Shown here piece by piece: positions 2,177 through 40,467 of a stretch of DNA of 64,000 bases. Position 1 is the stretch's first letter. The number at the start of each line of letters is the position of its first letter. A program made the position numbers and the translations under genes. Origin of the DNA: Lytechinus pictus. Lineage: Eukaryota. The DNA lies in assembly GCF_037042905.1 (NCBI RefSeq), contig NC_087261.1, forward strand, positions 1,612,001-1,676,000, given 5' to 3'. A model generated the notes under the pieces. The model had not been told where the DNA came from. It saw only the letters and a list, made by a program, of their open reading frames with translations, and made no database searches.

Positions 2177-2690
2177 TTAGTCCGGTATTTTCCCTTTCTT
2201 TTTACACGAGTCTATCCACCATACTTTCCAATCCTTTTGTTTAGGAGGTTTGTAGGTTCCATTCCGAACCCGTTTTGCGTCAGCTTCTAAACGATCACCA
2301 AGGTAGCACATAATATTTTTCGTCGGTCCCCCATAAGGCTTCAAAGACCCTTTTTTCTTCCATTCAAAGTATTTATTGTAGAGGGCGTCGTCACTATCGA
2401 CCCTTTTTAGATACTCCCCTAATTCCCTCGTCGTGTTAAAATCTTGGATGTGAATGAAGGAATTCGGAGGCGCTACTTTTTCGTAGTCACTCCTCGGAGG
2501 TCCAAACACGATGGGTACAATTTCTTTAAATAGGGCTTGAATCCAGAACTTTTCTGTGATATAATCAGTGCATTCGCTATTCTCCAGGGCTAAAAGGAAC
2601 TTGTGTTGTTTCAGTTTCCTCTCGCAGTCTTCAGTGCCAGCTCTGCAGGATTGGTTGCCGCACCTGCCATACATGTCTACAGGAACGTAT
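2177..2690 (-). CDS. Alpha-1,3-fucosyltransferase (GT10), coding exon 2
   Basis: Acceptor tcccatttag|A TAC GTT. Contains VDMYGRCG, the alpha-1,3-FucT motif KFLLALENSECTDYITEKFW and VPIVFGPP...PPNSFIH; stop TAA at 2179-2177. 758+514 nt = 424 codons including the stop. Confidence 0.93.
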
Positions 2691-2837
2691 CTAAATGGGA
2701 AAATAAAAGGCAAATTCTACTCAGTCAAAATGAAAATTTTCTTTTTACTAAGGCTAGCTTCAATAATCTTGACTAATCTTTACTAAGCACATGTCACTAA
2801 TTCAGAGATTAGTTCAATCACAGAGCGGCCCTTCCCC

Positions 2838-3262
2838 CTCTCATCTATTGGTTTCAGAATCCAAAGTCACAAAATGGCAAAAGAAAAACTAATGAAAATG
2901 AGATGGGATTAAACAAACTTTCCACTTTATCACAAATGTCGTGTACAGTGATTGGCTTGATCACAGGAAGTCAAAACCAATATTTCAAATGACTGGAAAT
3001 ATCACACAGCCACACACAGATCCCAGAATGAAGGCCCGGTAACCGGTGGAAAGTCTGAACACGGTGTTATCTGTGTGTCGTTGAATGAGACACACACCGA
3101 TGTTAATTCCATGTAGCTTCTTTGTGCTTGAACCAATCATTAAACATGCCCATGAAGGATATGTCTAATAAACTGAGAAGTTTGTTTAATTCCATCTCAT
3201 TTTCATTGATCTTTATTTTGCCCTATTGTGACTTTGGATTCGGAAACCAATTGATTTGAGAG
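2838..3262. mobile_element. MITE with about 83-bp terminal inverted repeats inside the fucosyltransferase intron
   Basis: 2838-2920 (ctctcatctattggtttcagaatccaaagtcacaa...gattaaacaaactt) is the imperfect reverse complement of 3178-3262. Confidence 0.75.
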
Positions 3263-3835
3263 ACTTTATCCTTTCTTTGCTGAGTAATATTTGTGCAGTG
3301 CCCTTGTAAAGTTTGATTAATTTCTTTTGGAACGTTTTGCGTTCTTTTTTACTCCTGCGTTATTTTTTCATCAATGATATGTATTTTGGGAACCCGACTC
3401 CCTCATCTGTTAATTAATAAAAGGCGATTCATGAAAGAAAAAAAAAATTACATATGAGTTTGTGTTTACTATTGTGTATGCTCAAATGTGAATACTATCC
3501 CAACATATATCATCCTTTTCACTTCGCTTAATAGAACTTACTTAATCATTCATAAAACAATGGACGTCAATGACGTCATGCTTGGGAAGGTAGAAGGCGG
3601 AAGGAGAAGAGGAAGACAGAGGAAAAGATGACTGAAAAGAATTACTAAATAAACTGGAAAATCTTTGAGAGTATACTGAGCATGCTTGCCCTAGATAGAA
3701 CAATATGGAGAAAGGTTGTACGTGGGGTCACCGGGAGTCGATGACGACTCAATGACACTTAACACCCACAACAACAATATCATGTATAATAATATAATAA
3801 CAAATACTGTAGGAATAATACATAGTTCATCTTGC

Positions 3836-4593
3836 CTTCCAAGCCTCTTCACGAAATCCATTCTTGGCCAGGATGTGCCTCTGCAGTTGGATGCCATCCA
3901 GACGACAAGCCTCGAGCGATCCTTGGCCCAATTTCTGGTGTCATTGGCACTAATCTCAGGTTTACCGGCAATGTACTGCCCATAGTCGGCCCGGAAGTCG
4001 GAATCGTACCGATACGTCATAATGTAGTCGTAGGAATTGTTGTAATACTGTTGAGGGGGAATCACGTGATGCATTGTATGACGTGGACTCTCAAGAGTGT
4101 AAAACACCCACTTCTGGCCCTTTGGTCTATGACTATGCATCGCATCCCAGTCCCACCGTGTCCAATGGAACAAGACAAGTGCCTCATTCTTCTGCATCGT
4201 GTCGAAGGATATATCAACGGTCAATTGTACATCGCAAGTACTTCCGGGACATTTTACATCATAGACACCCCTCGAATATCCCAGCTCACCTGCTCTAGTA
4301 GCCCAGAGATGGACCTTACGAGGACAGTCAACAACTGCTTGAGACATTTTCCCGATCGAATTAGTGTTCTTGGTATGCTGGGAATCTGGTCCAACTTTTG
4401 TCAGGTTAGTGTTGTCCAACGCGTTTTGTTTTGGGAAAACGGCTAGTTGTCTTGCCCTATTAAACTTCTGTTTCAAAATGTCCTCACCGGACTTTAGATC
4501 AACTCGCATCACCATTAAAATCAGTTGAACGTATCCACAAACGGCAAATAGAAGGATTGCACAGAAGAGTGATTTGGTCTTAGCCATACCCAT
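3836..4593 (-). CDS. Alpha-1,3-fucosyltransferase (glycosyltransferase family 10), coding exon 1
   Basis: ATG at 4593 (MGMAKTKSLFCAILLFAVCGYVQLILMVM, a type II signal-anchor), then a stem and the GT10 N-terminal motifs WVFYTLESP, IMTYRYDSD and VVWMASNC. Ends at phase 2 at GGA AG|GCAAG (GC donor). A pyrimidine tract plus AG just upstream of the ATG suggests a further 5' UTR exon. Confidence 0.88.
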
Positions 4594-5604
4594 ACCTGCC
4601 TTTAAGGGAAGAGAACACCAAAAAATAAATGCGTAAAAGTCGTTTAACATTTTAATTTCTCTACTCATATAGAGTCCATATAATCTGGCCTTAGACTCCG
4701 ATCTTTTAAGGAGTCCAGTGATTATGGCGAACGTGAAGAGAATCTATAAAATTGCCCATCCAATTAAGTGTCACATTTCAATTTAGTTTTATATATCATT
4801 TGTTTGCATGATTATGTTTTCATTATTAATAACGCATTTGTGAATTGCGAAATCACGAAGGTTGCGATGTTGGTAACACTATATTATCATTTATAGTACT
4901 GTTAACATGTGAATGATGGGTTCGTTACTTAAATCCTTGTAATATACCACTTCCCTTCAGGTACAATCTATGCCGATGGACAATTATCTTTTTTTTTTTG
5001 CACTGACTGTAAAACAATTTGTTCATGTTATCTAGGAATTCCCCAGAGTGAAATTATTCTGGGTACGTATTGGTAAATTACTAAATTCACTAGAATTTCA
5101 TGTAAACCCACATTGTCACTAACTAAAAAAGAATTGGCAATGGGTATAGATATCAAATCTGTGAATTCAATTCAATTTCGGCATACGCCCAATATTCAAG
5201 TTATAAAATGTACATGGTAAATTATTTTCAAGAGAACTTACACAGTAGTTTTTCGATATATGGAATGTCTTTAAAGATGAATTATTTATGGATAATATAT
5301 CGGATACTTTATCAAACGCTTTTAAACTTTTACCGAGAAATTTTCGAGATCATTATCTGAAGGGCTTTCCTTCTTTATCATCTTTGTTTATCATGTTTAT
5401 ATTATGTTGGATGTTAAATGTATTTTGTATATCTTAGTGTGAATGAATAGCTCTGATGAGGTAAAATATAAAAAGATAATACCACCGCATATCGAAGATT
5501 ATTTCATGTTGCAGAAGCACAGTGCCTCACCATCAAGTAGCCCGTTCTGAGTTTTATGTAAAGTGAAATTTGCTTTAGGATGTACATGATGTAGGCGCGC
5601 AGGT

Positions 5605-6916
5605 TAAATCAAGTTGCTTTGGTATGCACAGTTTGCAGTCACGTTGAAGATGTGCTGATTACAGTTATGTTGGTTTTGAGAACCAGATGTGAAGATTACG
5701 GTCAAGTTGGTTTGGAAACTAAAGAAAATGTGCTTATTGCAGTCAAGTTGGTTTGGAAAGTAGATACACAGATTGCAGTCATGTTGCTTTGGGAAGTAGA
5801 AGCGCAGGTTGCATTCATGTTGGTTTTTAAAAACAGATGCGCAGATTTCAATCACGTTGGTTTGGGAAGTAGGTGTGAACATTACAGTCAAGTTGGTTTG
5901 GAAAGCAAATGTGTAGATTGCAGTCATGTTGGTTTGGGAAGTAGGTGTGTAGATTGCAGTCATGTTGGTTTGGGAAGTAGGTGCAGAGATTGCATTCTTG
6001 TTGGTTTGGGAAGTAGGTGTGTAGATTGCAGTCATGTTGGTTTGGGAAGTAGGTGTGTAGATTGCATTCATGTTGGTTTGGGAAGTAGGTGTGTAGATTG
6101 CAGTCATGTTGGTTTGGGAAGTAGGTGCAGAAATTGCATTCATGTTGGTTTGGGAAGTAGGTGTGTAGATTGCAGTCATGTTGGTTTGGGAAGTAGGTGC
6201 AGAGATTGCAGTCATGTTGGTTTGGGAAGTAGGTGTGTAGATTGCAGTCATATTGGTTTGGGAAGTAGGTGCAGAGATTGTATTCATGTTGGTTTGGGAA
6301 GTGGGTGCAGAGATTGCATTCATGTTGGTTTGGGAAGTAGGTGTGTAGATTGCAGTCATGTTGGTTTGGGAAGTAGGTGCAGAGATTGCATTCATGTTGG
6401 TTTGGGAAGTAGGTGTGTAGATTGCAGTCATATTGGTTTGGGAAGTAGGTGTGTAGATTGCAATCATGTTGGTTTGGGAAGTAGGTGCAGAGATTGCATT
6501 CATGTTGGTTTGGGAAGTGGGTGCAGATATTGCATTCATGTTGGTTTGGGAAGTAGGTGTGTAGATTGCAGTCATGTTGGTTTGGGAAGTAGGTGCAGAG
6601 ATTGCATTCATGTTGGTTTGGGAAGTAGGTGTGTAGATTGCAGTCATGTTGGTTTTGGAAGTAGGTGCAGAGATTGCATTCATGTTGGTTTGGGAAGTAG
6701 GTGTGTAGATTGCAGTCATATTGGTTTGGGAAGTAGGTGTGTAGATTGCAGTCATGTTGGTTTGGGAAGTGGGTACAGAGATTGCATTCATGTTGGTTTG
6801 GGAAGTAGGTGCAGAGATTGCATTCATGTTGGTTTGGGAAGTGGGTGCAGAGATTGCATTCATGTTGGTTTGGGAAGTAGGTGTGTAGATTGCAGTCATG
6901 TTGGTTTGGGAAGTAG
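5605..6916. repeat. 36-bp minisatellite, array 1 (about 36 units, degenerate at the left edge)
   Basis: Unit TGTAGATTGCAGTCATGTTGGTTTGGGAAGTAGGTG with variant GCAGAG; gives a 12-aa periodicity in the ORF track. Confidence 0.95.
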
Positions 6917-7194
6917 GAGGGGCGTCGATCCATTTTTCAGATTGGGGGGGGGGGGGCAAAACGATGTTTGCCCCCCACCCCATATTTTCATTCGCCCCCC
7001 CCCCCCCCCCTCTGCGGCTCGGTGTAAACATGGCAGAGGTAAAAATGGCAGAGGTGAAATTGATAACACTTGAGTTGGTATTTCTCTTTTTTTTTCCTGG
7101 ACTTACATGCACGACCTTCTCATGTCAAATCGCTCTTCTTATATTCAAATTTGAAGAACACTTTGGATTCGAAATATTGTACGTAATTTATTAC

Positions 7195-8517: not shown

Positions 8518-11500
8518 GGAAGTACAGATTGCATTCATGTTGGTTTTGGATGTGGGTGCACAGATTGCAGTCATGTTGATTTGGTAAGTAAGTGTGTAGA
8601 TTGCAATCATGTTGGTTTTGGGTAGTAGGTGTACAGATTGCATTCATGTTGATTTGGAAAGTAGGAGGGCAGATTGCATTCATGTAGCTTTGGGGAGTAG
8701 GTGCACAGATTGCAGTCATGTTGGTTTGGGAAGTAGGTGTGTAGATTGCAGTCATGTTGGTTTTTGGAAGTAGATGCACAGATTATATTCATGTTGGTTT
8801 GGGAAGTGGGTGCACATATTGCATTCATATTGACTTGGGAAGCAGGTGTGTTGATTGCAGTCATGTTGGTTTGGGAAGTAAGTGCACAGATTCCAGTCAT
8901 GTTGGTTTGGGAAGTAGGAGCACAGATTGCAGTCATGTAGGTTTGGGAAGTAGGTCTACAGATTGCATTCATGTTGGTTTGGGAAGTAGGTGTGTAGATT
9001 GCAATCATGTTGGTTTGGGAAGTAGGTGTGTAGATTGCAGTCATGTTGGTTTGGGAAGTAGGTGTACAGATTGCATTCATGTTGGTTTGGGAAGTAGGTG
9101 TGTAGATTTCAATCATGTTGGTTTGGGAAGTAGGTGTACAGATCATGCAGATTGCATTCATGTTGCTTTGGGAAGTGGGTGCACAGATTGCATTCATGTT
9201 GATTTGGAAAGTAGGAGGGCAGATTGCATTCATGTAGCTTTGGGGAGTAGGTACACAGATTGCAATCATGTTGATTTGGGAAGTAGGTGTGTAGATTGCA
9301 GTCATGTTGGTTTTGGGAAGTAGATGCACAGATTATATTCATGTTGGTTTGGGAAGTGGGTGCACAGATTGCAGTCATGTTGGTTTGGTAAGTAGGTGTG
9401 TAGATTGCAGTCATGTTGGTTTTGGGAAGTAGATGCACAGATTATATTCATGTTGGTTTGGGAAGTGGGTGCACAGATTGCAGTCATATTGGTTTGGTAA
9501 GTAGGTGTGTACATTACAGTCATGTTGGTTTTGGGGAGTAGATGCACAGATTATATTCATGTTGGTTTGGGAAGTGGGTGCACAGATTGCAGTCATATTG
9601 ACTTGGGAAGTAGGTGTGTAGATTGCAGTCATGTTGGTTTTTGGAAGTAGATGCACAGATTATATTCATGTTGGTTTGGGAAGTGGGTGCACAGATTGCA
9701 TTCATATTGACTTGGAAAGTAGTTGTGTAGATTGCAGTCATGTTGGTTTGGGAAGTAAGTGCACAGATTCCAGTCATGTTGGTTTGGGAAGTAGGAGCAC
9801 AGATTGCAGTCATGTAGGTTTGGGAAGTAGGTCTACAGATTGCATTCATGTTGGTTTGGGAAGTAGGTGTGTAGATTGCAATCATGTTGGTCTGGGAAGT
9901 AGGTGTGTAGATTGCAGTCATGTTGGTTTGGGAAGTAGGTGTACAGATTGCATTCATGTTGGTTTGGGAAGTAGGTGTGTAGATTTCAATCATGTTGGTT
10001 TGGGAAGTAGGTGTACAGATCATGCAGATTGCATTCATGTTGCTTTGGGAAGTGGGTGCACAGATTGCATTCATGTTGATTTGGAAAGTAGGAGGGCAGA
10101 TTGCATTCATGTAGCTTTGGGGAGTAGGTGCACAGATTGCAATCATGTTGGTTTGGGAAGTAGGTGTGTAGATTGCAGTCATGTTGGTTTTGGGAAGTAG
10201 ATGCACAGATTATATTCATGTTGGTTTGGGAAGTGGGTGCACAGATTGCAGTCATGTTGGTTTGGGAAGTAGGTGTGTAGATTGCAGTCATGTTGGTTTT
10301 TGAAAGTAGATGCACAGATTCATGTTGGTTTGGGAAGTGGGTGCACAGATTGCATTCATATTGACTTGGAAAGTAGTTGTGTAGATTGCAGTCATGTTGG
10401 TTTGGGAAGTAAGTGCACAGATTCCAGTCATGTTGGTTTGGGAAGTAGGAGCACAGATTGCAGTCATGTAGGTTTGGGAAGTAGGTCTACAGATTGCATT
10501 CATGTTGGTTTGGGAAGTAGGTGTGTAGATTGCAATCATGTTGGTTTGGGAAGTAGGTGTGTAGATTGCAGTCATGTTGGTTTGGGAAGTAGGTGTACAG
10601 ATTGCATTCATGTTGGTTTGGGGAGTAGGTGCACAGATTGCAGTCATGTTGGTTTTTGGAAGTAGATGCACAGATTATATTCATGTTGGTTTGGGAAGTG
10701 GGTGCACAGATTGCATTCATATTGACTTGGGAAGTAGGTGTGTAGATTGCAGTCATGTTGGTTTGGGAAGTAAGTGCACAGATTCCAGTCATGTTGGTTT
10801 GGGAAGTAGGAGCACAGATTGCAGTCATGTAGGTTTGGGAAGTAGGTCTACAGATTGCATTCATGTTGGTTTGGGAAGTAGGTGTGTATATTGCAATCAT
10901 GTTGGTTTGGGAAGTAGGTGTGTAGATTGCAGTCATGTTGGTTTGGGAAGTAGGTTTACAGATTGCATTCATGTTGGTTTGGGAAGTAGGTGTGTAGATT
11001 TCAATCATGTTGGTTTGGGAAGTAGGTGTACAGATCATGCAGATTGCATTCATGTTGCTTTGGGAAGTGGGTGCACAGATTGCATTCATGTTGATTTGGA
11101 AAGTAGGAGGGCAGATTGCATTCATGTAGCTTTGGGGAGTAGGTGCACAGATTGCAATCATGTTGGTTTGGGAAGTAGGTGTGTAGATTGCAGTCATGTT
11201 GGTTTTGGGAAGTAGATGCACAGATTATATTCATGTTGGTTTGGGAAGTGGGTGCACAGATTGCAGTCATGTTGGTTTGGTAAGTAGGTGTGTAGATTGC
11301 AGTCATGTTGGTTTTGGGAAGTAGATGCACAGATTATATTCATGTTGGTTTGGGAAGTGGGTGCACAGATTGCAGTCATATTGGTTTGGTAAGTAGGTGT
11401 GTACATTACAGTCATGTTGGTTTTGGAAGTAAGTGCACAGATTCCAGTCATGTTGGTTTGGGAAGTAGGTATACAGATCATGCAGATTGCATTCATGTTG

Positions 11501-12306
11501 GTTTGGGAAGTGGGTACACATATTGCATTCATGTTGCTTTGGAAAGTAGGAGGGAAGATTACATTCATGTTGCCATGGCGATTAGGTGCACAGATTGCAA
11601 TCATGTTGGTTTGGGAAGTAGATGCACAGATTGCAGTCATGTTGGTTTAGTAAGTAGGTGTGTATATTGCAGTCATGTTGGTTTTGGGAAGTATGTGTAC
11701 ATATTATATTCATGTTGGTTTGGGAAGTGGGTGCACAGATTGCATTCATGTTGACTTGGGAAGTAGGTGTGTAGATTGCAGTCATGTTGGTTTGGGAAGT
11801 AATTACACAGATTCCAGTCATGTTGGTTTGGAAAGTAGGAGCACAGATTGCAGTCATGTAGGTTTGGGAAGTAGGTGCACAGATTGCAATCATGTTGGTT
11901 TGGGAAGTAGGTATGTAGATTGCAATCACGTTGGTTTGGGAAGTAGGTGTGTAGATTGCAGTCATGGTGGTTTGGGAAGTAGGTGTGTAGATTGCAGTCA
12001 TGTGGTTTGGGAAGTTGGTATGTAGATTGCAATCACGTTGGTTTGGGAAGTAGGTGCACAGATTCCAGTAATGTTGGTTTGGGAAGTAGGTGTGTAGATT
12101 GCAATCATGTTGGTTTGGGAAGTAGGTGTGTAGATTGCAGTCATGTTGGTTTCGGAAGTAAGAAGGCAAATTGCATTCATGTTGGTTTGGGAAGTAGGTG
12201 TGTAGATTGCAGTCATGTTGGTTTGGGAAGTAGGTGTGTACATTGCATTCATGTTGGTTTGGGAAGTAGGTGTGTAGATTCCAGTCATGTTGGTTTGGGA
12301 AGTAGA
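8518..12306. repeat. 36-bp minisatellite, array 2 (about 105 units) with higher-order repeats
   Basis: Same unit as array 1 but with the variant GCACAG. Contains 109-bp trimers and roughly 0.9-1.0 kb higher-order blocks. Confidence 0.95.
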
Positions 12307-31098: not shown

Positions 31099-32066
31099 TT
31101 AATAAACCACACACTCCCACTCAATACTCCGTCTAGTAAATTATCTTTTATTTTAATAAGACTGGCACTTATATTCTCACTCTGCTATGCAGGTGAGACA
31201 AAAATGGCATAGGCCTTCTAGGGTGTGTTTTTTTTTTATTATCATATGCAATTGATATCATAATTGATATTTGACATAAGTGCACCACAACATTGGATTA
31301 TCAGTTTCGTAGTTGACTTTTAAAAAGTCAGATTCAATTACAGAATCCCAATGAGCCACAAATAGCATGCAATGCCCCTCTACAATGCAATTGCTTCTGT
31401 TCACAACTATAGATAGTAACACTTTGCATGATGGAGTCAGTTTCAATGGCCAATAAAAGAAAGTCACACAAACAACTTGACAAAATAAAGTGGCAAGTGA
31501 AATAGCTAATTGTTTTATAGTGTCCTAGATCAAGAGAACACGCTTTTATTCACAATTGTTAAGAAAATCAACATAATCAACAAGCATTTTGTTTTTGTCC
31601 ATTACGATAAATTGAGACTTGCTTTGTTGACATTCTGTGCTTGCATATACAAATATAATAAACAGACTTGATGTATATTTTCACAGCAAAGATATATTTC
31701 TATTCAACCTCTTCACGTACATATTAACCTCTTCAAATTAAAAAAAATTAAAAATACAGAATTTATATTAAGAGATCAACCAGTATAAATTGAAAGGCAT
31801 TCTTTTTTCGGATATCAATTGGATATCAATTACGTCCAGGTGGGCATATTTTTTTCTCTTGTAACTAAATAATTCCGGGTATTTTCACTCATAATAACGT
31901 GGTGCAGACTCGCAGTTTTTATGCGTGTAAACGCCATTAACTTGCATCGGCTCGCGGTGCAGACATGGCAATTTTGCTCCGCCAAAATAGTAAGGTTTCC
32001 ACTTTGGCGAGTTTGAGTTGCGAGTCATATAATACGCGAGCTGCGCGACCTCTAACTCGCCTTTAA

Positions 32067-32484
32067 GGCCACCGCACACCTTACGACCCGACCAGTCGCC
32101 GACTGGCTTGCGACTGAGTGAGGGGAGATGTGACGTCACAGCGCATGTCAGCTTCAGAGTCGCAGACCGGTCAGAGACAAGTCGCAAGGAAAATCGGAAG
32201 GATTTGACATGTCGAATCCTTATGACTGGATCGCAAGCTCAATCCAAATTCCAGCCAATCAGACAGCAGAGTTGCACGACGCGTATATGATAAACAACGC
32301 GCATACGCAGTAGTAAACGCATTCTCTTTGTTGTTATGCCAAAAAGCAAAAAGCGCATGCGTGAGTCACAAATCGGATCGCAAGGTGTGCGGTGTCGAGG
32401 CTTCTGACTACCTTGCGATTCATTTCCCCTCACCCAGTCGCAAGCCAGTCGCCGACCAGTCGGGTCGTAAGGTGTGCGGTGGCC
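32067..32484. mobile_element. Young MITE with about 50-bp TIRs, flanked by TTAA (Harbinger- or Kolobok-like)
   Basis: TTAA|ggccaccgcacaccttacgacccgac ... gtcgggtcgtaaggtgtgcggtggcc|TTAA. Confidence 0.88.
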
Positions 32485-32760
32485 TTAACTCGCACAAGCT
32501 CGCGTAAAATTCACATTTTATCTTGAATTTGCTTGAGTGACAAAAGACTCAACATCGAGTTCACTACGCTTGCTGTACGAGTGAACCGAGCGCAAAACGA
32601 GTCAGACCGAGCTTAGTATGAGTTGCAGTGACCTTTATACGACTTAAAGCGAGCTCTGAACGAGTTATCAAGATTTTGTTACGAGTGATAAGAGTTTCAT
32701 ACGATCAAGGTGAAGGAAATGCACATTTTGGGCACTCAAAGATGGATGCCGGCGGCGGCG

Positions 32761-33982
32761 CACAGTGGGCCGGGGCGAAACAAAAGTGCGCCAAAAGTAA
32801 TTTTGGGCAATTTCAGATTTTTAATTTTTGTTATGCCCAGCTGAAAGACAACACTTTGAAGAATACTTCGGCAAAATATTTCATTCCGGAATTTGCATAA
32901 AGGTTGTTAATTTCCTACCTCAAATCGTAAAATGTGACATTTTGCGAAATGTCACGTATGTGACAACCTAGTTGAAAAACAGGCCATTTTACATGAGGTT
33001 TTTCATGTAGGAATCTGAAATGGCTCCCACATAATCCTGATATATTCTGTTTTCGTGTGAAAGGGTTCAAAGTAGATAAAAGACATCTTTCAGGGGGTTT
33101 ATAGGATGATTATTCCTCGAAATAGGCTGAAAATCCATGTTTTTTGCATTTACATTAGAAACGTTTAGATTTTCGTGGATTTCCGTCTAAATTCTATAAG
33201 CATCATTTTTCCCGATGTCTAAGCTTTAAGTCGATACCAAATTTAGCTGCCCGTTTTTGCCCGTTTTCATGTTAGAGCCGATTTTACTTGACACAACACC
33301 CCAAAAACCTGTTAAAAACGGTCATGTTTATGCCGCGCAGTCGTCGTAGCGCACCGTATGGGTGTACATTATTGCCGTTCGCTTTTGCACAGCGAGGACG
33401 ATTCCCCTTCATTCCATGAAAATGACATGAATTCCGGGCATAATGTAAACAAAATAAAGGTCGCTAACGCAAATAAGGGCTATACCCACAACTCTTCCAG
33501 ATATAAAACTTACTTGTATAATAATTTCAGTAAAAAAACCCTCCTCATAGTGATACGTTCGTGGTGTTTTTTATACTCTGCGTTTTACACAAGTCAACAC
33601 AGCTTGATAAAGCACGGTTAATATATTTCAGATTTTATAAATCTAATTAATGATCATTTTGATGCCATAAAATTATTGTTGGCATCTTATACACACTTTT
33701 TAGGCATGTGAGAAACATAAACCAACATTCACTCTGGTCAATCTGACAGTAGCACATGCATAACACAAAATGTATATACCACACATTGTTTAGCGTAATT
33801 TGTCTTTTCACAGATAGGTTTTAAGTAGCCAATCAAAATTTTGTATCAAGGTGACGTCACATCGGCTTTAAATTATGTTCAGTCAATTCTACGCCCAAAC
33901 TTACCCTTAATCAACATGTTAAAGTAAAATATAACTCGAAATATATTTTTGGCGCACTTTCAACCCATTCTGGCCCACTGTG
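32761..33982. mobile_element. Non-autonomous Transib-like transposon with RSS-like TIRs
   Basis: Both ends start CACAGTGGGCC, followed by an 11-bp unconserved spacer and then AAAGTGCGCCAAAA. 5-bp GC-rich flanks CGGCG / CGGCT. No transposase ORF. Confidence 0.85.
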
Positions 33983-34040
33983 CGGCTGTCGGAAAAGCGG
34001 CGCCTAAAGTCTCACTCTGCTATGCAGGTGAGACAAAAAT
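33983..34040 (+). mobile_element. 3' end of a Helentron-type non-autonomous element (target of the Transib insertion)
   Basis: gtcggaaaagcggcgcctaaagtctcactctgctatgcaggtgagacaaaa, the same as 40417-40467. Its upstream (GGC)n part lies at about 32745-32760. Another solo end is at 31175-31204. Confidence 0.75.
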
Positions 34041-34134
34041 GAAGAAGCGGGGGCTTGATTTGAATGGATTTTTATCTCTATCGACACAGACAAAAGAATC
34101 ATGTTCTGTATGGAACCTTCATGACTATTTCTGC

Positions 34135-34520
34135 TCGTTTTGCAGCTTTCCAATTCAGACCTCATCCAACACTTTTGAATCCTGCTCTTTTCGTCATGGC
34201 ATGATCATAACAAGCATGGTATCATTTTAAAGGAAACTAATTGATCTTTTGAATGATATCAAATATGCATTGTGTAAAATTTGGAGTTGGAAGAAATTAA
34301 TGGCCAAAATCAGATTTCAAAATTTTTGGCTCGTTTTGCAGCTATTCAATTCAGACTTCATCCAACACTTTGAATCCTGTTCTTTTCGTGATGGCATGAT
34401 CATAACAAGCATTGTATCATTGTAAAGATAATTAAATGATCTTTTAAATGATGTCAAATATGCATTGTGTAAAATTGGGAGTTGGGAGAAATTAATGGCC
34501 AAACTCAGATTTTCAATTTT
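34135..34520. repeat. Tandem duplication of about 190 bp
   Basis: ctcgttttgcagct...aattcagac...atggcatgatcataacaagcat...gaaattaatggccaaa..cagattt occurs twice. Confidence 0.8.
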
Positions 34521-36625
34521 TTTGAGGGGTTTATATATGGCAAAAATATAGATCCATGGACATTTATCATTCAGCTGGCATGTCAATGAGCACTCGCAAC
34601 GCACTCTGAATAAACTCATACGAAACTCGCTGTAACTCGGGGTGCTCGATCTAAAATCGCTCTTATCTCGTGGGCACCTCCACTTGACTCGTAAAACGAT
34701 CGCAATGCTCGTATCTCGCTCTTGACAACTCGGAACGCACTCGCGTATACTCAGATGTGGCGAGTTATTACGAGTTATGACGAGTTTATCTCGAGCTTCT
34801 TCCGAGTTATTGCGAGTACTGAGAGTATATGACGAGTTTAGGTGAGTTCAACACGAGTTACAGCGAGTAAGCAACATTTTTGAACATGTTCAAAAATTTT
34901 GAAACTGCTCACGACTTCAAGGAGAGTTGTCCCGAGCTTGAAAGAGCTCCGCCGAGCCATGCCGAGTTGTCGCGAGTTATCCCGAGTTTCATGGTGAGCT
35001 TTATGCGAGTTATCGCGAGTGCCGCATTTTGGCAACTCTCCATAACTCGCCATTACTCGCGATGTTAACTCGCCAAAGTGGAAACCTTCAGAACCGCGAG
35101 CCGATGCAGACAAGGCAATTTTTCTTCGCGTAAATACGAAGCCGAGTCTGCACCGGCACTGAGCGCGCGTTTCATGATTTAAATCTAATCCACTGATCTG
35201 TGTTTTTGCCCCACGAGTCGATTCTGCACCACGAGCTGGGGCAGCGTGTAAACGCGACGCAGGATAATCCGCGAGCCAAGTCTGCACCGACTCTCTCGGG
35301 TCCTCACCGCGAGCCGATCGATGCAGCGTGTAAACACGGTAATAAGCTGCTATTTTCCTAGATTTTTTTTACATGGATGTCGAATAAAGGACCACTTTCC
35401 TTTGATGTCTTTTCGTCTCCCATCGATACCAATAAAATAAATTTATGATTTTCATTTATCATAAGTTTACCATATTTAGACAAAGGTTATACTCTACAAT
35501 GTAGTATCTAGCGCTAAACGCTTGCCATCGGAGTAAATTGCAATTTGACCCACACCCACTTCGTCTTCTTTCCATTTGGTCTAATACCAGTTCGTCTACA
35601 ACCGATTCGCCAACTTAGCATATCAGCCCATTAACCATTTTGTCCATTTAAATTTTCCATTAGGCTATATCCATTGTGTGTAATCCACTCTTCCACTTGT
35701 TCTTACACAATGTATGATTAGACGAACTATTTATGATCCAAATTTAAAGCACACAATAAGTAGACGTGGTGGAAATTGTGGGGCATTCGTTTAAATAACA
35801 ATTAGACGGAGTGAGAATTAAACGCACTGGTATGAACACAGAAGTTCTTTTTTTAGTGATATGTCCTATTTACATGATTTAGCAGCAGGTAGACAGTATG
35901 CGTCTGAAATGATATTTATCCCTGGATTTGTCACAGCATGCGATGGCACAATGTATTTTTCTGCTGAAATCATATTTTCGAGCTTGTGTCGGTCTGGTGC
36001 TGCGAAAAGGATAAAGAAAAAAAGGGGGGAAAATGCTTATCAGAGTTTCATTTTCATTGTTCAGTTCTACAACTATGATCAATGAACTATGAGGGACACA
36101 TCCTGATGGTTGTGATTCTACCATTATAGACACCAGGATGTTTAGAGTCTAATCAAACCGGTTGTGGAATTCAAAGTTTTATGAGAGTGCGTGAGAAATC
36201 TCAATTTACGACGATTCTCATAATGGCATTATTGATTCAAAATCACAGTTTGCTGGTAGAGCACAAAGAAAAAAAAAATCACTTAATGTGCACATTGTCT
36301 GCATGTGGCAACGTGCTAGTGGGGTGGACTTTGGTCTTTCATAACAATAAAATAAATGATGATGTCAACTGCCTTTATCAGAATGACGATGCTAATGTTC
36401 ATTTCCTTGATATATTGTGAAATATAAAAATGATTATTGCAACAACATCAATATAATCATTTTCATCTANNNNNNNNNNNNNNNNNNNNNNNNNNNNNNN
36501 NNNNNNNNNNNNNNNNNNNNNNNNNNNNNNNNNNNNNNNNNNNNNNNNNNNNNNNNNNNNNNNNNNNNNNNNNNNNNNNNNNNNNNNNNNNNNNNNNNNN
36601 NNNNNNNNNNNNNNNNNNNNNNNNN

Positions 36626-38356: not shown

Positions 38357-40467
38357 ACAAGTGGAATGCCTCTGGCGGTCTCACCTGCATCACGCGATTC
38401 AATATAGCAGCAGTGCTGACTTTAAAAACTGCTATAAAATAATTGTTCACAAAAAATACTACGTTCATTGACATTTGACCTTGATCATGTGACCTAAAAC
38501 TTGTCAGTGATACTTGATTACCATTATATCCACATTTTATACACTTTATCTATAAACTTGAAAGTTATGACCGCAATCTAATTACCTCTAAGATGGCCAA
38601 AGTTCAATGACGTTTGACTTTGGTCATGTGACCTGAAACTCGCATGAGATGTTCAGTGATACTTGATGACTCTTATTTCCAAGTTTTATGAACTACACCA
38701 ATATACTTACAGAGTTATGATGGTAATTCAACAAATGAAGAGCTCACTTGCAAAAGGGGTTAGGTCCATTTTTCATCAAATTTGATTTTTGGGTCTCTAT
38801 GTATATATTTTTAGTAGCTCTCTAAGATGATACCAAAGAAAAGTTGAAATTCCTATTTAAAAGTGATCAAAAATGGCAAAGAAATATTACCTTTTTTTTT
38901 CAAAAGGGGTTAGGTCCATGTTAGTTTAGTTGCAAAAGGGATTAGGTCCACACCGATTTTTTTTTTTGGAAAAGAATATTTAAAAAAATGAAGAATGGTA
39001 GATTTATTTTATTACCAATTTTATGTTGTCATGGTAGGGAATCTTGAAAATTTAGTTTCGCATAAGAATATGCAATATAGCAGAATTAAAAAAAAAGATT
39101 TTCTTGGAGTGGACCTAAGCCCTTTTGCAAACAAACTCTTCTGAAGAGCTCATTTGTCAAAAGGGGTGAGGTCCATTGTTCATAAATTTTATTGTTATCT
39201 GTCTCTAAACCTCTAATTTTTTTGTCGTTTTGATGAAAACAAAGAAAATTTGAAATTTACATGAAAACGTGAAAAAAGTGGCAAAGAAAAATCACTTTTT
39301 TAATCAAAATAGATTGGATTCATTTCAGTTTACTTGCAAAAGGGCTTAGGTTCACAATGATAATTTTTAAAAGAATTTATAGAAAAAAAATTGAAGACAG
39401 TTAGATTTCTTTTATACCCAATTTTATGTTCACATGATAAGGTAGTACATCATGACAATTTAGTTTCTCATAAGAATATTGCAGTTAGTGAAAATAAAAA
39501 CATGTTTTTTCTCAGAATGGTCCAAAGTGGACCTAAGCTCTTTTGCAACTAAACTCTTCAAATACACCCAACATGGCCAAAGTCCATTGACCTTTGACCT
39601 TGATCATGTGGCCTGAAACTCGACAAGATGTTCAGTGATACTTGGTTACTCTAATGTCCACGTTTTATGAACTAGATCAATACACTTACAGAGATAAGAT
39701 GGTAATTCAACAAATACCCCCAACATGGCCAAAAATCATTGACCTTAAATGACCTTTGACCCTGTTCATGTGACCTAAAACTTGTCAGTGATACTTGATT
39801 ACCAATCTATCCACATTTTATACACTATATATATAAACTTGAAAGTTATTACAGCAATCTAATAATTACATCTAAGATGGCCAAAGTTCAATGACCTTAA
39901 ATTACCTTTGACTTTGGTCATGTGACCTGAAACTCGCATGAGATGTTCAGTGATACTTGATGACTCTTATTTCTAAGTTTTTATGAACTATACCAATATA
40001 CTTACAGAGTTATGATGGTAAATCAACAAATACCCCCAACATGGCCAAAGTCCATTGACCTTTGACCTTGATCATGTGACCTGAAACTCAAGCAGGATGT
40101 TTAGTAATACTTGATTAACCTAATGTTCAAGTTTCATGAACTAGGTCCATATATTTTCTAAGTTATGATGACATTTCAAAAACTTAACCTTAGGTTAAGA
40201 TTTTGATGTTGATTCCCCCAACATGGTCTAATTTCATTGACCCTGAATGACCTTTGACCTTGGTCATGTGACCTAAATCTCAGGCAGGATGTTCAGTAAT
40301 ACTTGATTAACCTTATGGCCAAGTTTCATGAACTAGGTTTATATACTTTCTAAGTTATGCTGTCATTTCAAAAACTTAACCTTCGGTTATGATTTGGTGT
40401 TGACGCCGCCGCCGCCGTCGGAAAAGCGGCGCCTATAGTCTCACTCTGCTATGCAGGTGATACAAAA
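38357..40467 (+). mobile_element. Helentron-associated non-autonomous element (HINE; Tsp/pearl-like architecture) with internal 150-180-bp tandem repeats
   Basis: 5' subterminal gtctcacctgcat; 3' gtctcactctgctatgcaggtgatac hairpin plus A-run; (GCC)n microsatellite before the 3' end; repeats with a TGACCTTTGACCT core. Confidence 0.8.
38737..39559. mobile_element. Head-to-tail dimer of an approximately 410-bp TIR element with 4-bp AAAT TSD (Sola-like)
   Basis: AAAT|gaagagctcacttgcaaaaggggttaggtcca ... aaactcttc t gaagagctc ... tggacctaagctcttttgcaactaaactcttc|AAAT. Confidence 0.75.

What the first reader, a model, noticed from the sequence alone, without database searches (positions are those of the whole stretch)
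32756..33987. Transib-like element whose ends mimic a 12/23 pair of V(D)J recombination signal sequences
Seen in sequence: the left end is CACAGTG + 12 bp (ggccggggcgaa) + ACAAAAGTG. The right end, reverse complemented, is CACAGTG + 23 bp (ggccagaatgggttgaaagtgcg) + CCAAAAATA. Each nonamer-like block matches the RSS nonamer ACAAAAACC at 6/9 and both heptamers are perfect. The left end also has an A-tract at the 23 position (ccaaaagta). The TIRs are bipartite: 11 identical bp, 11 unrelated bp, then AAAGTGCGCCAAAA. Flanks CGGCG/CGGCT form a 4/5 GC-rich TSD. Established: CAC-starting TIRs, A-rich blocks and 5-bp TSDs define Transib and RAG-like transposons, the ancestors of RAG1 and RSSs, and echinoderms carry RAG1/2-like genes. 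Inference: this is a 1222-bp non-autonomous member mobilised in trans by a Transib or RAG-like transposase, and possibly a natural substrate with asymmetric ends.
Basis: partly seen in the sequence, partly recalled or inferred. Interest (0 to 1): 0.8.

Follow-up and report, generated by a model that had tools for sequence, protein, structure and literature searches.

The report
Ordinary non-autonomous Transib transposon copy
This is one copy of an abundant, non-coding sea-urchin DNA transposon of the Transib type; its two ends have the same layout, so the resemblance to a 12/23 pair of antibody-gene recombination signals comes from reading different halves of one conserved block at each end.

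Summary

It is a real mobile element. It is highly repeated in the host's sequencing runs. Two marine metagenome contigs from other organisms carry the same end.

The 12/23 reading does not hold. The two ends align without a gap. Both have an 11-bp terminal block (CACAGTGGGCC), 10 variable bases, then one 15-bp block ((A/G)AAAGTGCGCCAAAA) in the same register. That block has two A-tracts 11 bp apart, which fall where a 12- and a 23-spacer nonamer would sit.

Both blocks are 100% identical in relatives whose interiors are only about 40-47% alike, so the blocks are the constrained parts.

Four independent insertions sit beside CGRC. This fits a 5-bp GC-rich target duplication; Transib1_SP is published with CGGCG.

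The element has no ORF longer than 87 aa inside. The autonomous partner could not be reached.

Published work already describes Transib ends that resemble RSSs, including 12/23-like families. The scan's first readers noted the same kind of element at least ten times elsewhere in this genome.

Verdict: an ordinary symmetric non-autonomous Transib, of low interest.

The parts
32756..32760 (+). Left copy of the putative 5-bp target-site duplication, CGGCG
   Evidence: It matches the right flank at 4/5. The same CGRC start is seen beside three other independent insertions. It is identical to the published TSD of Transib1_SP (PMC1131882).
32761..32804 (+). Left terminal inverted repeat, about 44 bp
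   Evidence: It aligns ungapped with the reverse complement of 33939-33982.
32761..32771 (+). Left terminal block CACAGTGGGCC (RSS-type heptamer plus GGCC)
   Evidence: 11/11 identical to the right end and to the ends in L001 and L002.
32772..32781 (+). Left variable spacer GGGGCGAAAC
   Evidence: Only 3-5 of 10 bases match L001/L002, and by eye only 2 of 10 match the right end's AGAATGGGTT.
32782..32796 (+). Left subterminal block AAAAGTGCGCCAAAA, with two A-tracts 11 bp apart
Evidence: 15/15 identical in L001 and L002, whose interiors are about 40-47% alike. It is 14/15 identical to the right end.
32805..33938 (.). Non-coding interior
   Evidence: The longest ORF lying wholly inside is 87 aa. 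There are no significant Pfam matches and no Rfam matches. Read depth is lower in the middle than near the ends, and there are many internal-deletion joints.
33939..33982 (-). Right terminal inverted repeat, about 44 bp
33947..33961 (-). Right subterminal block GAAAGTGCGCCAAAA, in the same register as the left one (TIR positions 22-36)
33972..33982 (-). Right terminal block CACAGTGGGCC
33983..33987 (+). Right copy of the putative target-site duplication, CGGCT
   Evidence: It is a 4/5 match to CGGCG. It lies at the edge of a GC triplet tract that precedes a hyper-abundant short repeat.

Best explanation
The feature is a fossil copy of a high-copy, non-autonomous DNA transposon of the Transib superfamily in the sea urchin Lytechinus pictus. 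It encodes nothing.

Its ends are symmetric and bipartite. Each has an 11-bp terminal block that begins with the cleavage heptamer CACAGTG, 10 free bases, and a 15-bp subterminal block, (A/G)AAAGTGCGCCAAAA.

Inferred mechanism, from what is established for Transib and HzTransib: a Transib transposase encoded elsewhere binds both blocks at each end and pairs the two ends. It nicks at the 5' C of CAC and releases the element by a nick-hairpin reaction. It then inserts the element with a 5-bp stagger into a GC-rich CGRCS target, which produces the CGGCG/CGGCT flanks.

The 12/23 appearance arises because the subterminal block contains two A-tracts one helical turn apart, at the positions where a 12-spacer and a 23-spacer nonamer would lie. 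Both ends carry the block at the same position.
For: Shown here:
- The ends align ungapped, with both conserved blocks in register.
- The element is repeated. In runs of the host species, 11,786 and 16,883 contig pieces lie on the 2.4-kb stretch, which includes the repeated flanks. Depth steps up at the left boundary and is higher near the ends than in the middle of the element. Many internal-deletion joints are seen.
- Exact matches to 25 specified end bases occur in two metagenome contigs. Their interiors are only about 40-47% identical to this one, while block 1 (11/11) and block 2 (15/15) are identical and the spacer is 3-5/10. Those contigs belong to organisms other than the window's.
- Four independent insertions are flanked by CGGCG/CGGCT, CGGCC, CGACG and CGACG. 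CGRC occurs at 0.0023 per site in the window.
- There is no coding capacity.
- The host is a sea urchin.

From the literature:
- The Transib TIR is CACAATG + 23 bp + AAAAAAATC, with 5-bp GC-rich TSDs, and Transib1_SP is flanked by CGGCG (PMC1131882).
- Transib elements with intact TIRs occur in many echinoderms, whereas no transposition-competent RAGL is known there (PMC10629977).
- Transib uses nick-hairpin cleavage and makes invariably 5-bp TSDs (PMC4840297).
Against: No autonomous copy with these ends encoding a Transib transposase could be examined, so superfamily assignment rests on ends and flanks alone.

Only this one copy was seen with both flanks. It sits in a (GGC)n tract, where a 4/5 match is easy to get and a 2-bp CG/CG duplication would also fit.

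The left and right spacers differ at 8 of 10 positions. No majority-variant letters were listed inside either TIR, which suggests, but does not prove, that this spacer difference is typical of the family. Some functional distinction between the two ends is therefore not excluded.
Confidence: 0.8

Rival explanations
1. The family is a true 12/23-type asymmetric Transib. On this reading the transposase reads the proximal A-tract (12-bp spacing) at the left end and the distal one (23-bp spacing) at the right end, and needs one end of each kind.
For: At the 12-bp spacing the left end scores 6/9 against ACAAAAACC and the right end only 3/9. Left ends of the related L001 and L002 also keep AAAAGTG there, scoring 5/9 and 4/9. 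The left and right spacers differ systematically. 12/23-like Transib families have been published for insects (PMC1131882, PMC8355894).
Against: Both ends carry the distal block at 23 bp with 5-6/9 matches, and the whole 15-bp block is in the same register at both ends. The difference at the 12-bp position comes down to three bases of the variable spacer plus one A/G change. The published asymmetric families have ends that resemble RSS12 and RSS23 respectively, which is not the case here, where both ends carry the 23-position block. Only one right end was available.
Confidence: 0.07
2. It is a non-autonomous derivative of a RAG-like (RAG1L/RAG2L) transposon and is mobilised by sea-urchin RAGL proteins.
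For: It has a perfect RSS heptamer and 5-bp-type GC-rich flanks, both shared with RAGL elements (PMC7204232). Sea urchins carry RAG1L/RAG2L genes (PMC9885083). Unchecked scan notes report RAG1-like ORFs elsewhere in this genome.
Against: RAGL ends have the consensus CACTWMCAAAC..., with a conserved A-rich TR2 at positions 8-10 and only about 13-17 bp conserved (PMC7204232, PMC10629977). This element has GGC at 8-10 and GGCC at 8-11, and its second conserved block lies at positions 22-36. No TIRs have been found around any echinoid RAGL locus (PMC9885083).
Confidence: 0.07
3. It belongs to another CAC-ended superfamily, for example the CACTA/Mirage/Chapaev group, which makes a 2-4 bp target duplication. 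On this reading the 5-bp look comes from the triplet-repeat context.
For: In this copy CG/CG (2 bp) is a perfect flank match, while the 5-bp match is only 4/5. The site lies in a (GGC)n tract.
Against: The same CGRC motif appears in the same direct orientation on left flanks (window, L001, L002) and on right flanks (window, organism B copy). That is what duplication of a 5-bp target gives; a 2-bp duplication would need an 8-bp repeated target motif. L001's left flank ends in CC, not CG. The end architecture matches the Transib description (PMC1131882).
Confidence: 0.05

Closest known systems
Transib1_SP / TransibN1_SP of Strongylocentrotus purpuratus (Kapitonov & Jurka 2005, PMC1131882; deposited in Repbase)
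   Same: Both hosts are sea urchins. Both have CAC-initiated ends of about 38-44 bp with an A-rich 9-mer after a 23-bp spacer. The published Transib1_SP copy has the TSD CGGCG, identical to this element's left flank. A non-autonomous family exists there too.
   Different: The Repbase consensus sequences are not held by any tool here, so sequence identity with those families could not be tested. The host here is Lytechinus pictus, not S. purpuratus.
12/23-like Transib families of insects (Transib5, Transib2_AG, TransibN1-3_AG; PMC1131882 Fig. 4C, PMC8355894)
   Same: Both have heptamer and nonamer-like motifs that can be read at 12 and 23 bp.
   Different: In those families the 5' and 3' ends resemble RSS12 and RSS23 respectively. 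Here the subterminal block is at the same distance from the heptamer at both ends, so the ends are symmetric.
HzTransib of Helicoverpa zea (PMC4840297; structures cited in PMC10629977)
   Same: It serves as the model for the inferred mechanism: symmetric ends, a CAC heptamer essential for cleavage, nick-hairpin cleavage, and invariant 5-bp, slightly GC-rich TSDs.
   Different: HzTransib ends have little or no nonamer similarity. This lineage has a strongly conserved 15-bp subterminal block with two A-tracts.
ProtoRAG and PflRAGL-A ends (PMC8289069, PMC10629977)
   Same: All are bipartite ends with conserved terminal and subterminal elements separated by a less conserved spacer, and all have 5-bp GC-rich TSDs.
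   Different: Those ends have spacers of unequal length (27/31 bp, or a 10-bp asymmetry) and an A-rich TR2 next to the heptamer. Here the spacers are equal and no TR2 is present.

Membership tests
Transib superfamily (non-autonomous member) | Ends begin 5'-CAC with a heptamer close to CACAATG / CACAGTG | tested here: met
   CACAGTG is present at both ends, 6/7 to the Transib consensus and 7/7 to the RSS heptamer.
Transib superfamily (non-autonomous member) | TIR of about 38 bp with an A-rich 9-mer after a spacer of about 23 bp | tested here: met
   CCAAAAGTA and CCAAAAATA lie at a 23-bp spacing on both ends. Against ACAAAAACC they score 5/9 and 6/9. By eye they score the same against AAAAAAATC.
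Transib superfamily (non-autonomous member) | 5-bp target-site duplication | tested here: inconclusive
   The flanks match at 4/5 in the only copy seen with both flanks, and that copy sits in a triplet-repeat context. A direct CGRC motif on left and right flanks of four insertions favours 5 bp.
Transib superfamily (non-autonomous member) | Preference for GC-rich targets | tested here: met
   All five flanks are CGRCN, in a window that is about 36% G+C.
Transib superfamily (non-autonomous member) | An autonomous partner with the same ends that encodes a Transib (RAG1-core-like DDE) transposase | not testable with these tools
   There is no way here to search the host genome by DNA, and no Transib protein was available from a tool to use as a query. 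ORF-based searches returned nothing.
Transib superfamily (non-autonomous member) | Multi-copy, with sharply defined ends | tested here: met
   Thousands of contig pieces are laid at 80-99% likeness. Depth steps up at the left end at 32767. Organism B copies end at 33984.
12/23-asymmetric Transib families | One end resembles RSS12 and the other RSS23, so the nonamer-like block lies at different distances from the heptamer at the two ends | tested here: not met
   The ungapped alignment puts the 14-15-bp block in the same register at both ends.
RAG-like (RAGL) transposons | A-rich TR2 directly after the heptamer (positions 8-10), and RAG1L/RAG2L genes in autonomous copies | tested here: not met
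   Positions 8-11 are GGCC at both ends and in L001 and L002. No coding capacity is present.

The most novel reading that the evidence does not exclude
In this echinoderm Transib lineage each end carries two A-tract half-sites one helical turn apart (CAAAAGT-GCGC-CAAAAGT). They lie exactly where a 12-spacer and a 23-spacer nonamer would sit, and the block is perfectly conserved between distant relatives. If both half-sites are bound by the transposase, a dual end of this kind could be the ancestral state, and 12-type and 23-type signals could arise from it by loss of one half-site at either end. The stronger proximal half-site at the left end would then be a first step toward such asymmetry.
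Probability: 0.08. Interest if true: 0.6.

Novelty: new member of a known kind. Interest (0 to 1): 0.2.

Why it matters
It matters little beyond annotation. RSS-like Transib ends, including 12/23-like ones, have been published since 2005, and Transib elements with intact ends are known in many echinoderms.

The useful result is negative. The many '12/23' notes this scan has raised for this genome most likely describe one symmetric family.

A minor positive point is that cross-species conservation defines the constrained parts of the end: an 11-bp terminal block and a 15-bp subterminal block with two phased A-tracts. These could guide binding studies of echinoderm Transib transposases.

Tried and rejected
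- I tried to fetch other copies through predicted proteins. An internal 87-aa ORF and a TIR-crossing ORF of L001 found no homologue. Exact look-ups of five window ORFs were not in the collection.
- End-pattern scans of viral contigs found nothing.
- A relaxed end pattern in prokaryotic genomes gave 9 matches. About 20 are expected by chance for 19 specified bases, so I discarded them.
- I fetched about 25 kb each of L. variegatus and S. purpuratus around fucosyltransferase homologues. They held no copy of the element and were not syntenic with the insertion site, so an orthologous empty site could not be examined.
- There is no other copy or other Transib-like pair in the window.
- Pfam on six internal ORFs and Rfam on 30-36 kb gave nothing.
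- No paper in the library prints these end sequences. The supplement of PMC1131882 that shows TransibN1_SP copies is not held.
- The single read-laying run lists only its best-supported rows. The loose ends at the element's own boundaries in the host species, and minority variants inside the TIRs, were therefore not visible.

Full report
**Observation**

The region 32761-33982 is a 1222-bp element. Every sequence detail in the finding is correct.
- Both ends start with CACAGTG.
- Read inward, the two ends align without any gap: 11 identical bases (CACAGTGGGCC), an 11-base stretch with only 2 matches, 14 identical bases (AAAGTGCGCCAAAA), then weaker similarity out to about 44 bp.
- The left end reads ACAAAAGTG after a 12-bp spacer (6/9 to ACAAAAACC) and CCAAAAGTA after 23 bp (5/9).
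- The right end reads CCAAAAATA after 23 bp (6/9) and TTGAAAGTG after 12 bp (3/9).
- The flanks are CGGCG and CGGCT.

It is the only heptamer/inverse-heptamer pair in the window with extended end similarity, 29/40. A 9-mer matching the nonamer at 6/9 or better occurs at 1.8% of window positions.

**It is a real, repeated mobile element**

I laid Logan contigs of four public runs on 32200-34600 at 80% likeness.
- In the two runs of the host species, 11,786 and 16,883 pieces were laid on that stretch, which includes the repeated flanks. Likeness ranged from under 90% to over 99%.
- Depth steps up at the left boundary, from bin 32686-32766 to bin 32767-32847.
- The terminal ~80-160 bp are several-fold deeper than the middle.
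- Many internal 'skip' joints indicate deletion derivatives.
- About 17 listed positions inside the element are ones where nearly all other copies differ from this one (for example 32799 A>C, 33936 T>A, 33939 A>G). This copy is therefore a somewhat diverged fossil.
- None of the listed majority differences falls in TIR positions 1-38 of either end. This suggests, but does not prove, that these ends are typical of the family, because the tool shows only the best-supported rows.

The interior has no ORF over 87 aa, no significant Pfam match and no Rfam match.

**Relatives elsewhere define what is constrained**

An exact scan of JGI metagenome contigs for CACAGTGGGCC-N11-AAAGTGCGCCAAAA found two contigs, L001 and L002. 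With 25 specified bases, chance matches are not expected.
- Both contigs carry a left-type end.
- Their interiors align only weakly to the window's, at about 40-47% identity; L001 and L002 are 84-94% alike to each other over the first 300 bp.
- TIR positions 1-11 are 11/11 identical and positions 22-36 (AAAAGTGCGCCAAAA) are 15/15 identical. The 10 bases in between match at only 3-5/10.
- L001 is held by runs of organisms coded E-L and by marine and plankton metagenomes, and by none of the organisms A-D that hold the window's element.

The two blocks are thus conserved across host taxa while everything else has drifted. That is the signature of transposase recognition sites.

**Why the 12/23 reading fails**

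The conserved subterminal block occupies the same TIR positions (22-36) at both ends of the window's copy. The right end has G instead of A at position 22. The block contains two A-tracts 11 bp apart: CAAAAGT-GCGC-CAAAAGT at the left end, GAAAGT-GCGC-CAAAAAT at the right. Eleven base pairs is also the difference between a 12- and a 23-bp spacer, so one A-tract falls at the '12' nonamer position and the other at the '23' position at each end.

The only real left/right difference at the proximal site is three bases of the variable spacer (ACA against TTG) plus the A/G at position 22.

The published 12/23-like Transib families have 5' and 3' ends that resemble RSS12 and RSS23 respectively (PMC1131882, Fig. 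4C legend). Here both ends carry the block at the 23-type position, so that pattern is absent. The ends are best described as symmetric and bipartite, in the sense used for RAGL and Transib ends in PMC8289069 and PMC9435367, with equal spacers.

**Target site**

Five flanks from four independent insertions were read in the element's orientation:
- CGGCG and CGGCT (window)
- CGGCC (L001)
- CGACG (L002)
- CG+ACG... (two organism B contigs that end at 33984)

CGRC occurs at 0.0023 per site in the window. The same motif in direct orientation on both left and right flanks is what duplication of a 5-bp CGRCS target produces. Kapitonov and Jurka report a 4132-bp Transib1_SP flanked by CGGCG, and GC-rich 5-bp TSDs as the superfamily hallmark (PMC1131882).

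There is a caveat. This copy sits in a (GGC)n tract at the edge of a hyper-abundant short repeat. Other copies of that repeat read (GAT/GAC)n(GCC)n-GTCGGAAAAG.... A 4/5 match is therefore cheap here, and CG/CG would also fit a 2-bp duplication. No second copy with both flanks could be obtained.

**Which transposase**

RAGL ends have an A-rich TR2 at positions 8-10 and only about 13-17 conserved bases (PMC7204232, PMC10629977). This element has GGC at 8-10 (GGCC at 8-11) and a second conserved block at 22-36. No echinoid RAGL locus has TIRs (PMC9885083), whereas Transib elements with intact TIRs occur in many echinoderms (PMC10629977).

The host is a sea urchin. A window ORF is 100% identical to a Lytechinus pictus fucosyltransferase, and the fetched genome locus matches the window base for base. 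This places the window at GCA_037042905.1 CM073242.1:1,612,001-1,676,000.

I therefore assign the element to Transib as a non-autonomous member. The one untested defining feature is an autonomous partner with the same ends. The mechanism (end binding, nick at CAC, hairpin on the flank, 5-bp staggered integration) is inferred from HzTransib work (PMC4840297), not shown here.

**Comparison and novelty**

RSS-like Transib ends, their 23-bp architecture, 12/23-like variants, GC-rich 5-bp TSDs and sea-urchin families have been in print since 2005 (PMC1131882). They were discussed again in 2021-2023 (PMC8355894, PMC9435367, PMC10629977).

This copy adds a member from L. pictus and a cross-species definition of its constrained end blocks.

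First readers of this scan have flagged the same kind of element many times on other pieces of this genome. That fits a common family and adds no independent support.

The most novel reading left open is that the dual, phased A-tract block is bound at both halves and represents a state from which 12- and 23-type signals could diverge. I give it about 8%.

**Dead ends**

These are listed under Tried and rejected. The main limitation is that no tool here searches the host genome by DNA, and the single read-laying run does not return copy sequences.

Noticed in passing
window 33985-34040 (other copies at 40414-40467 and 31164-31206): A hyper-abundant ~55-bp repeat, GTCGGAAAAGCGGCGCCTAAAGTCTCACTCTGCTATGCAGGTGAGACAAAAATG. 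Its summed contig depth is about 40 times that of the neighbouring Transib element end. It ends sharply at 34039-34041. In other copies it is preceded by (GAT/GAC)n(GCC)n triplet tracts. It contains a strong hairpin, GTCTCAC...GTGAGAC (DNA fold -13.1 kcal/mol, z = -4.4). It may be the end of a SINE, a Helitron-like element or a retroposon tail; it was not identified.
   Followed up: partly
window 34133-34522: Two tandem ~195-bp units, 90% identical, lie just right of the insertion. They are themselves highly repeated in the host's reads.
   Followed up: no
window 5736-6917 and 8524-12305: Two arrays of a 36-bp tandem repeat, with 33 and 104 copies and strong GC skew. Long ORFs are open on both strands. 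The public record annotates genes of 236, 220 and 213 residues across this region. A Pfam 'Pox_VP8_L4R' hit to one ORF looks like a low-complexity artefact.
   Followed up: partly
window 2177-4668, minus strand: A GT10 alpha-1,3-fucosyltransferase gene (Pfam Glyco_tran_10_N plus Glyco_transf_10). It is 100% identical to a Lytechinus pictus protein, which identifies the window as L. pictus CM073242.1:1,612,001-1,676,000.
   Followed up: yes
L001 590-1260 (metagenome contig Ga0102829_1034279): The related element in this marine contig carries an internal array of ~120-bp units, each built round a long palindrome (ttccacgaagtgacaca...tgtgtcacttcgtggaa). The contig ends in a minisatellite, gacaattgctccgcc. 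This family is held by organisms other than the window's and by plankton metagenomes and metatranscriptomes. The same Transib end blocks therefore occur in different marine taxa.
   Followed up: no
window 32200-32523 and 32063-32130: The left neighbourhood is another high-copy repeat, with depth comparable to or above the Transib element and a sharp end near 32486-32489. A 68-bp inverted partner lies at 32063-32130. The Transib copy therefore lies in a patchwork of repeats.
   Followed up: no
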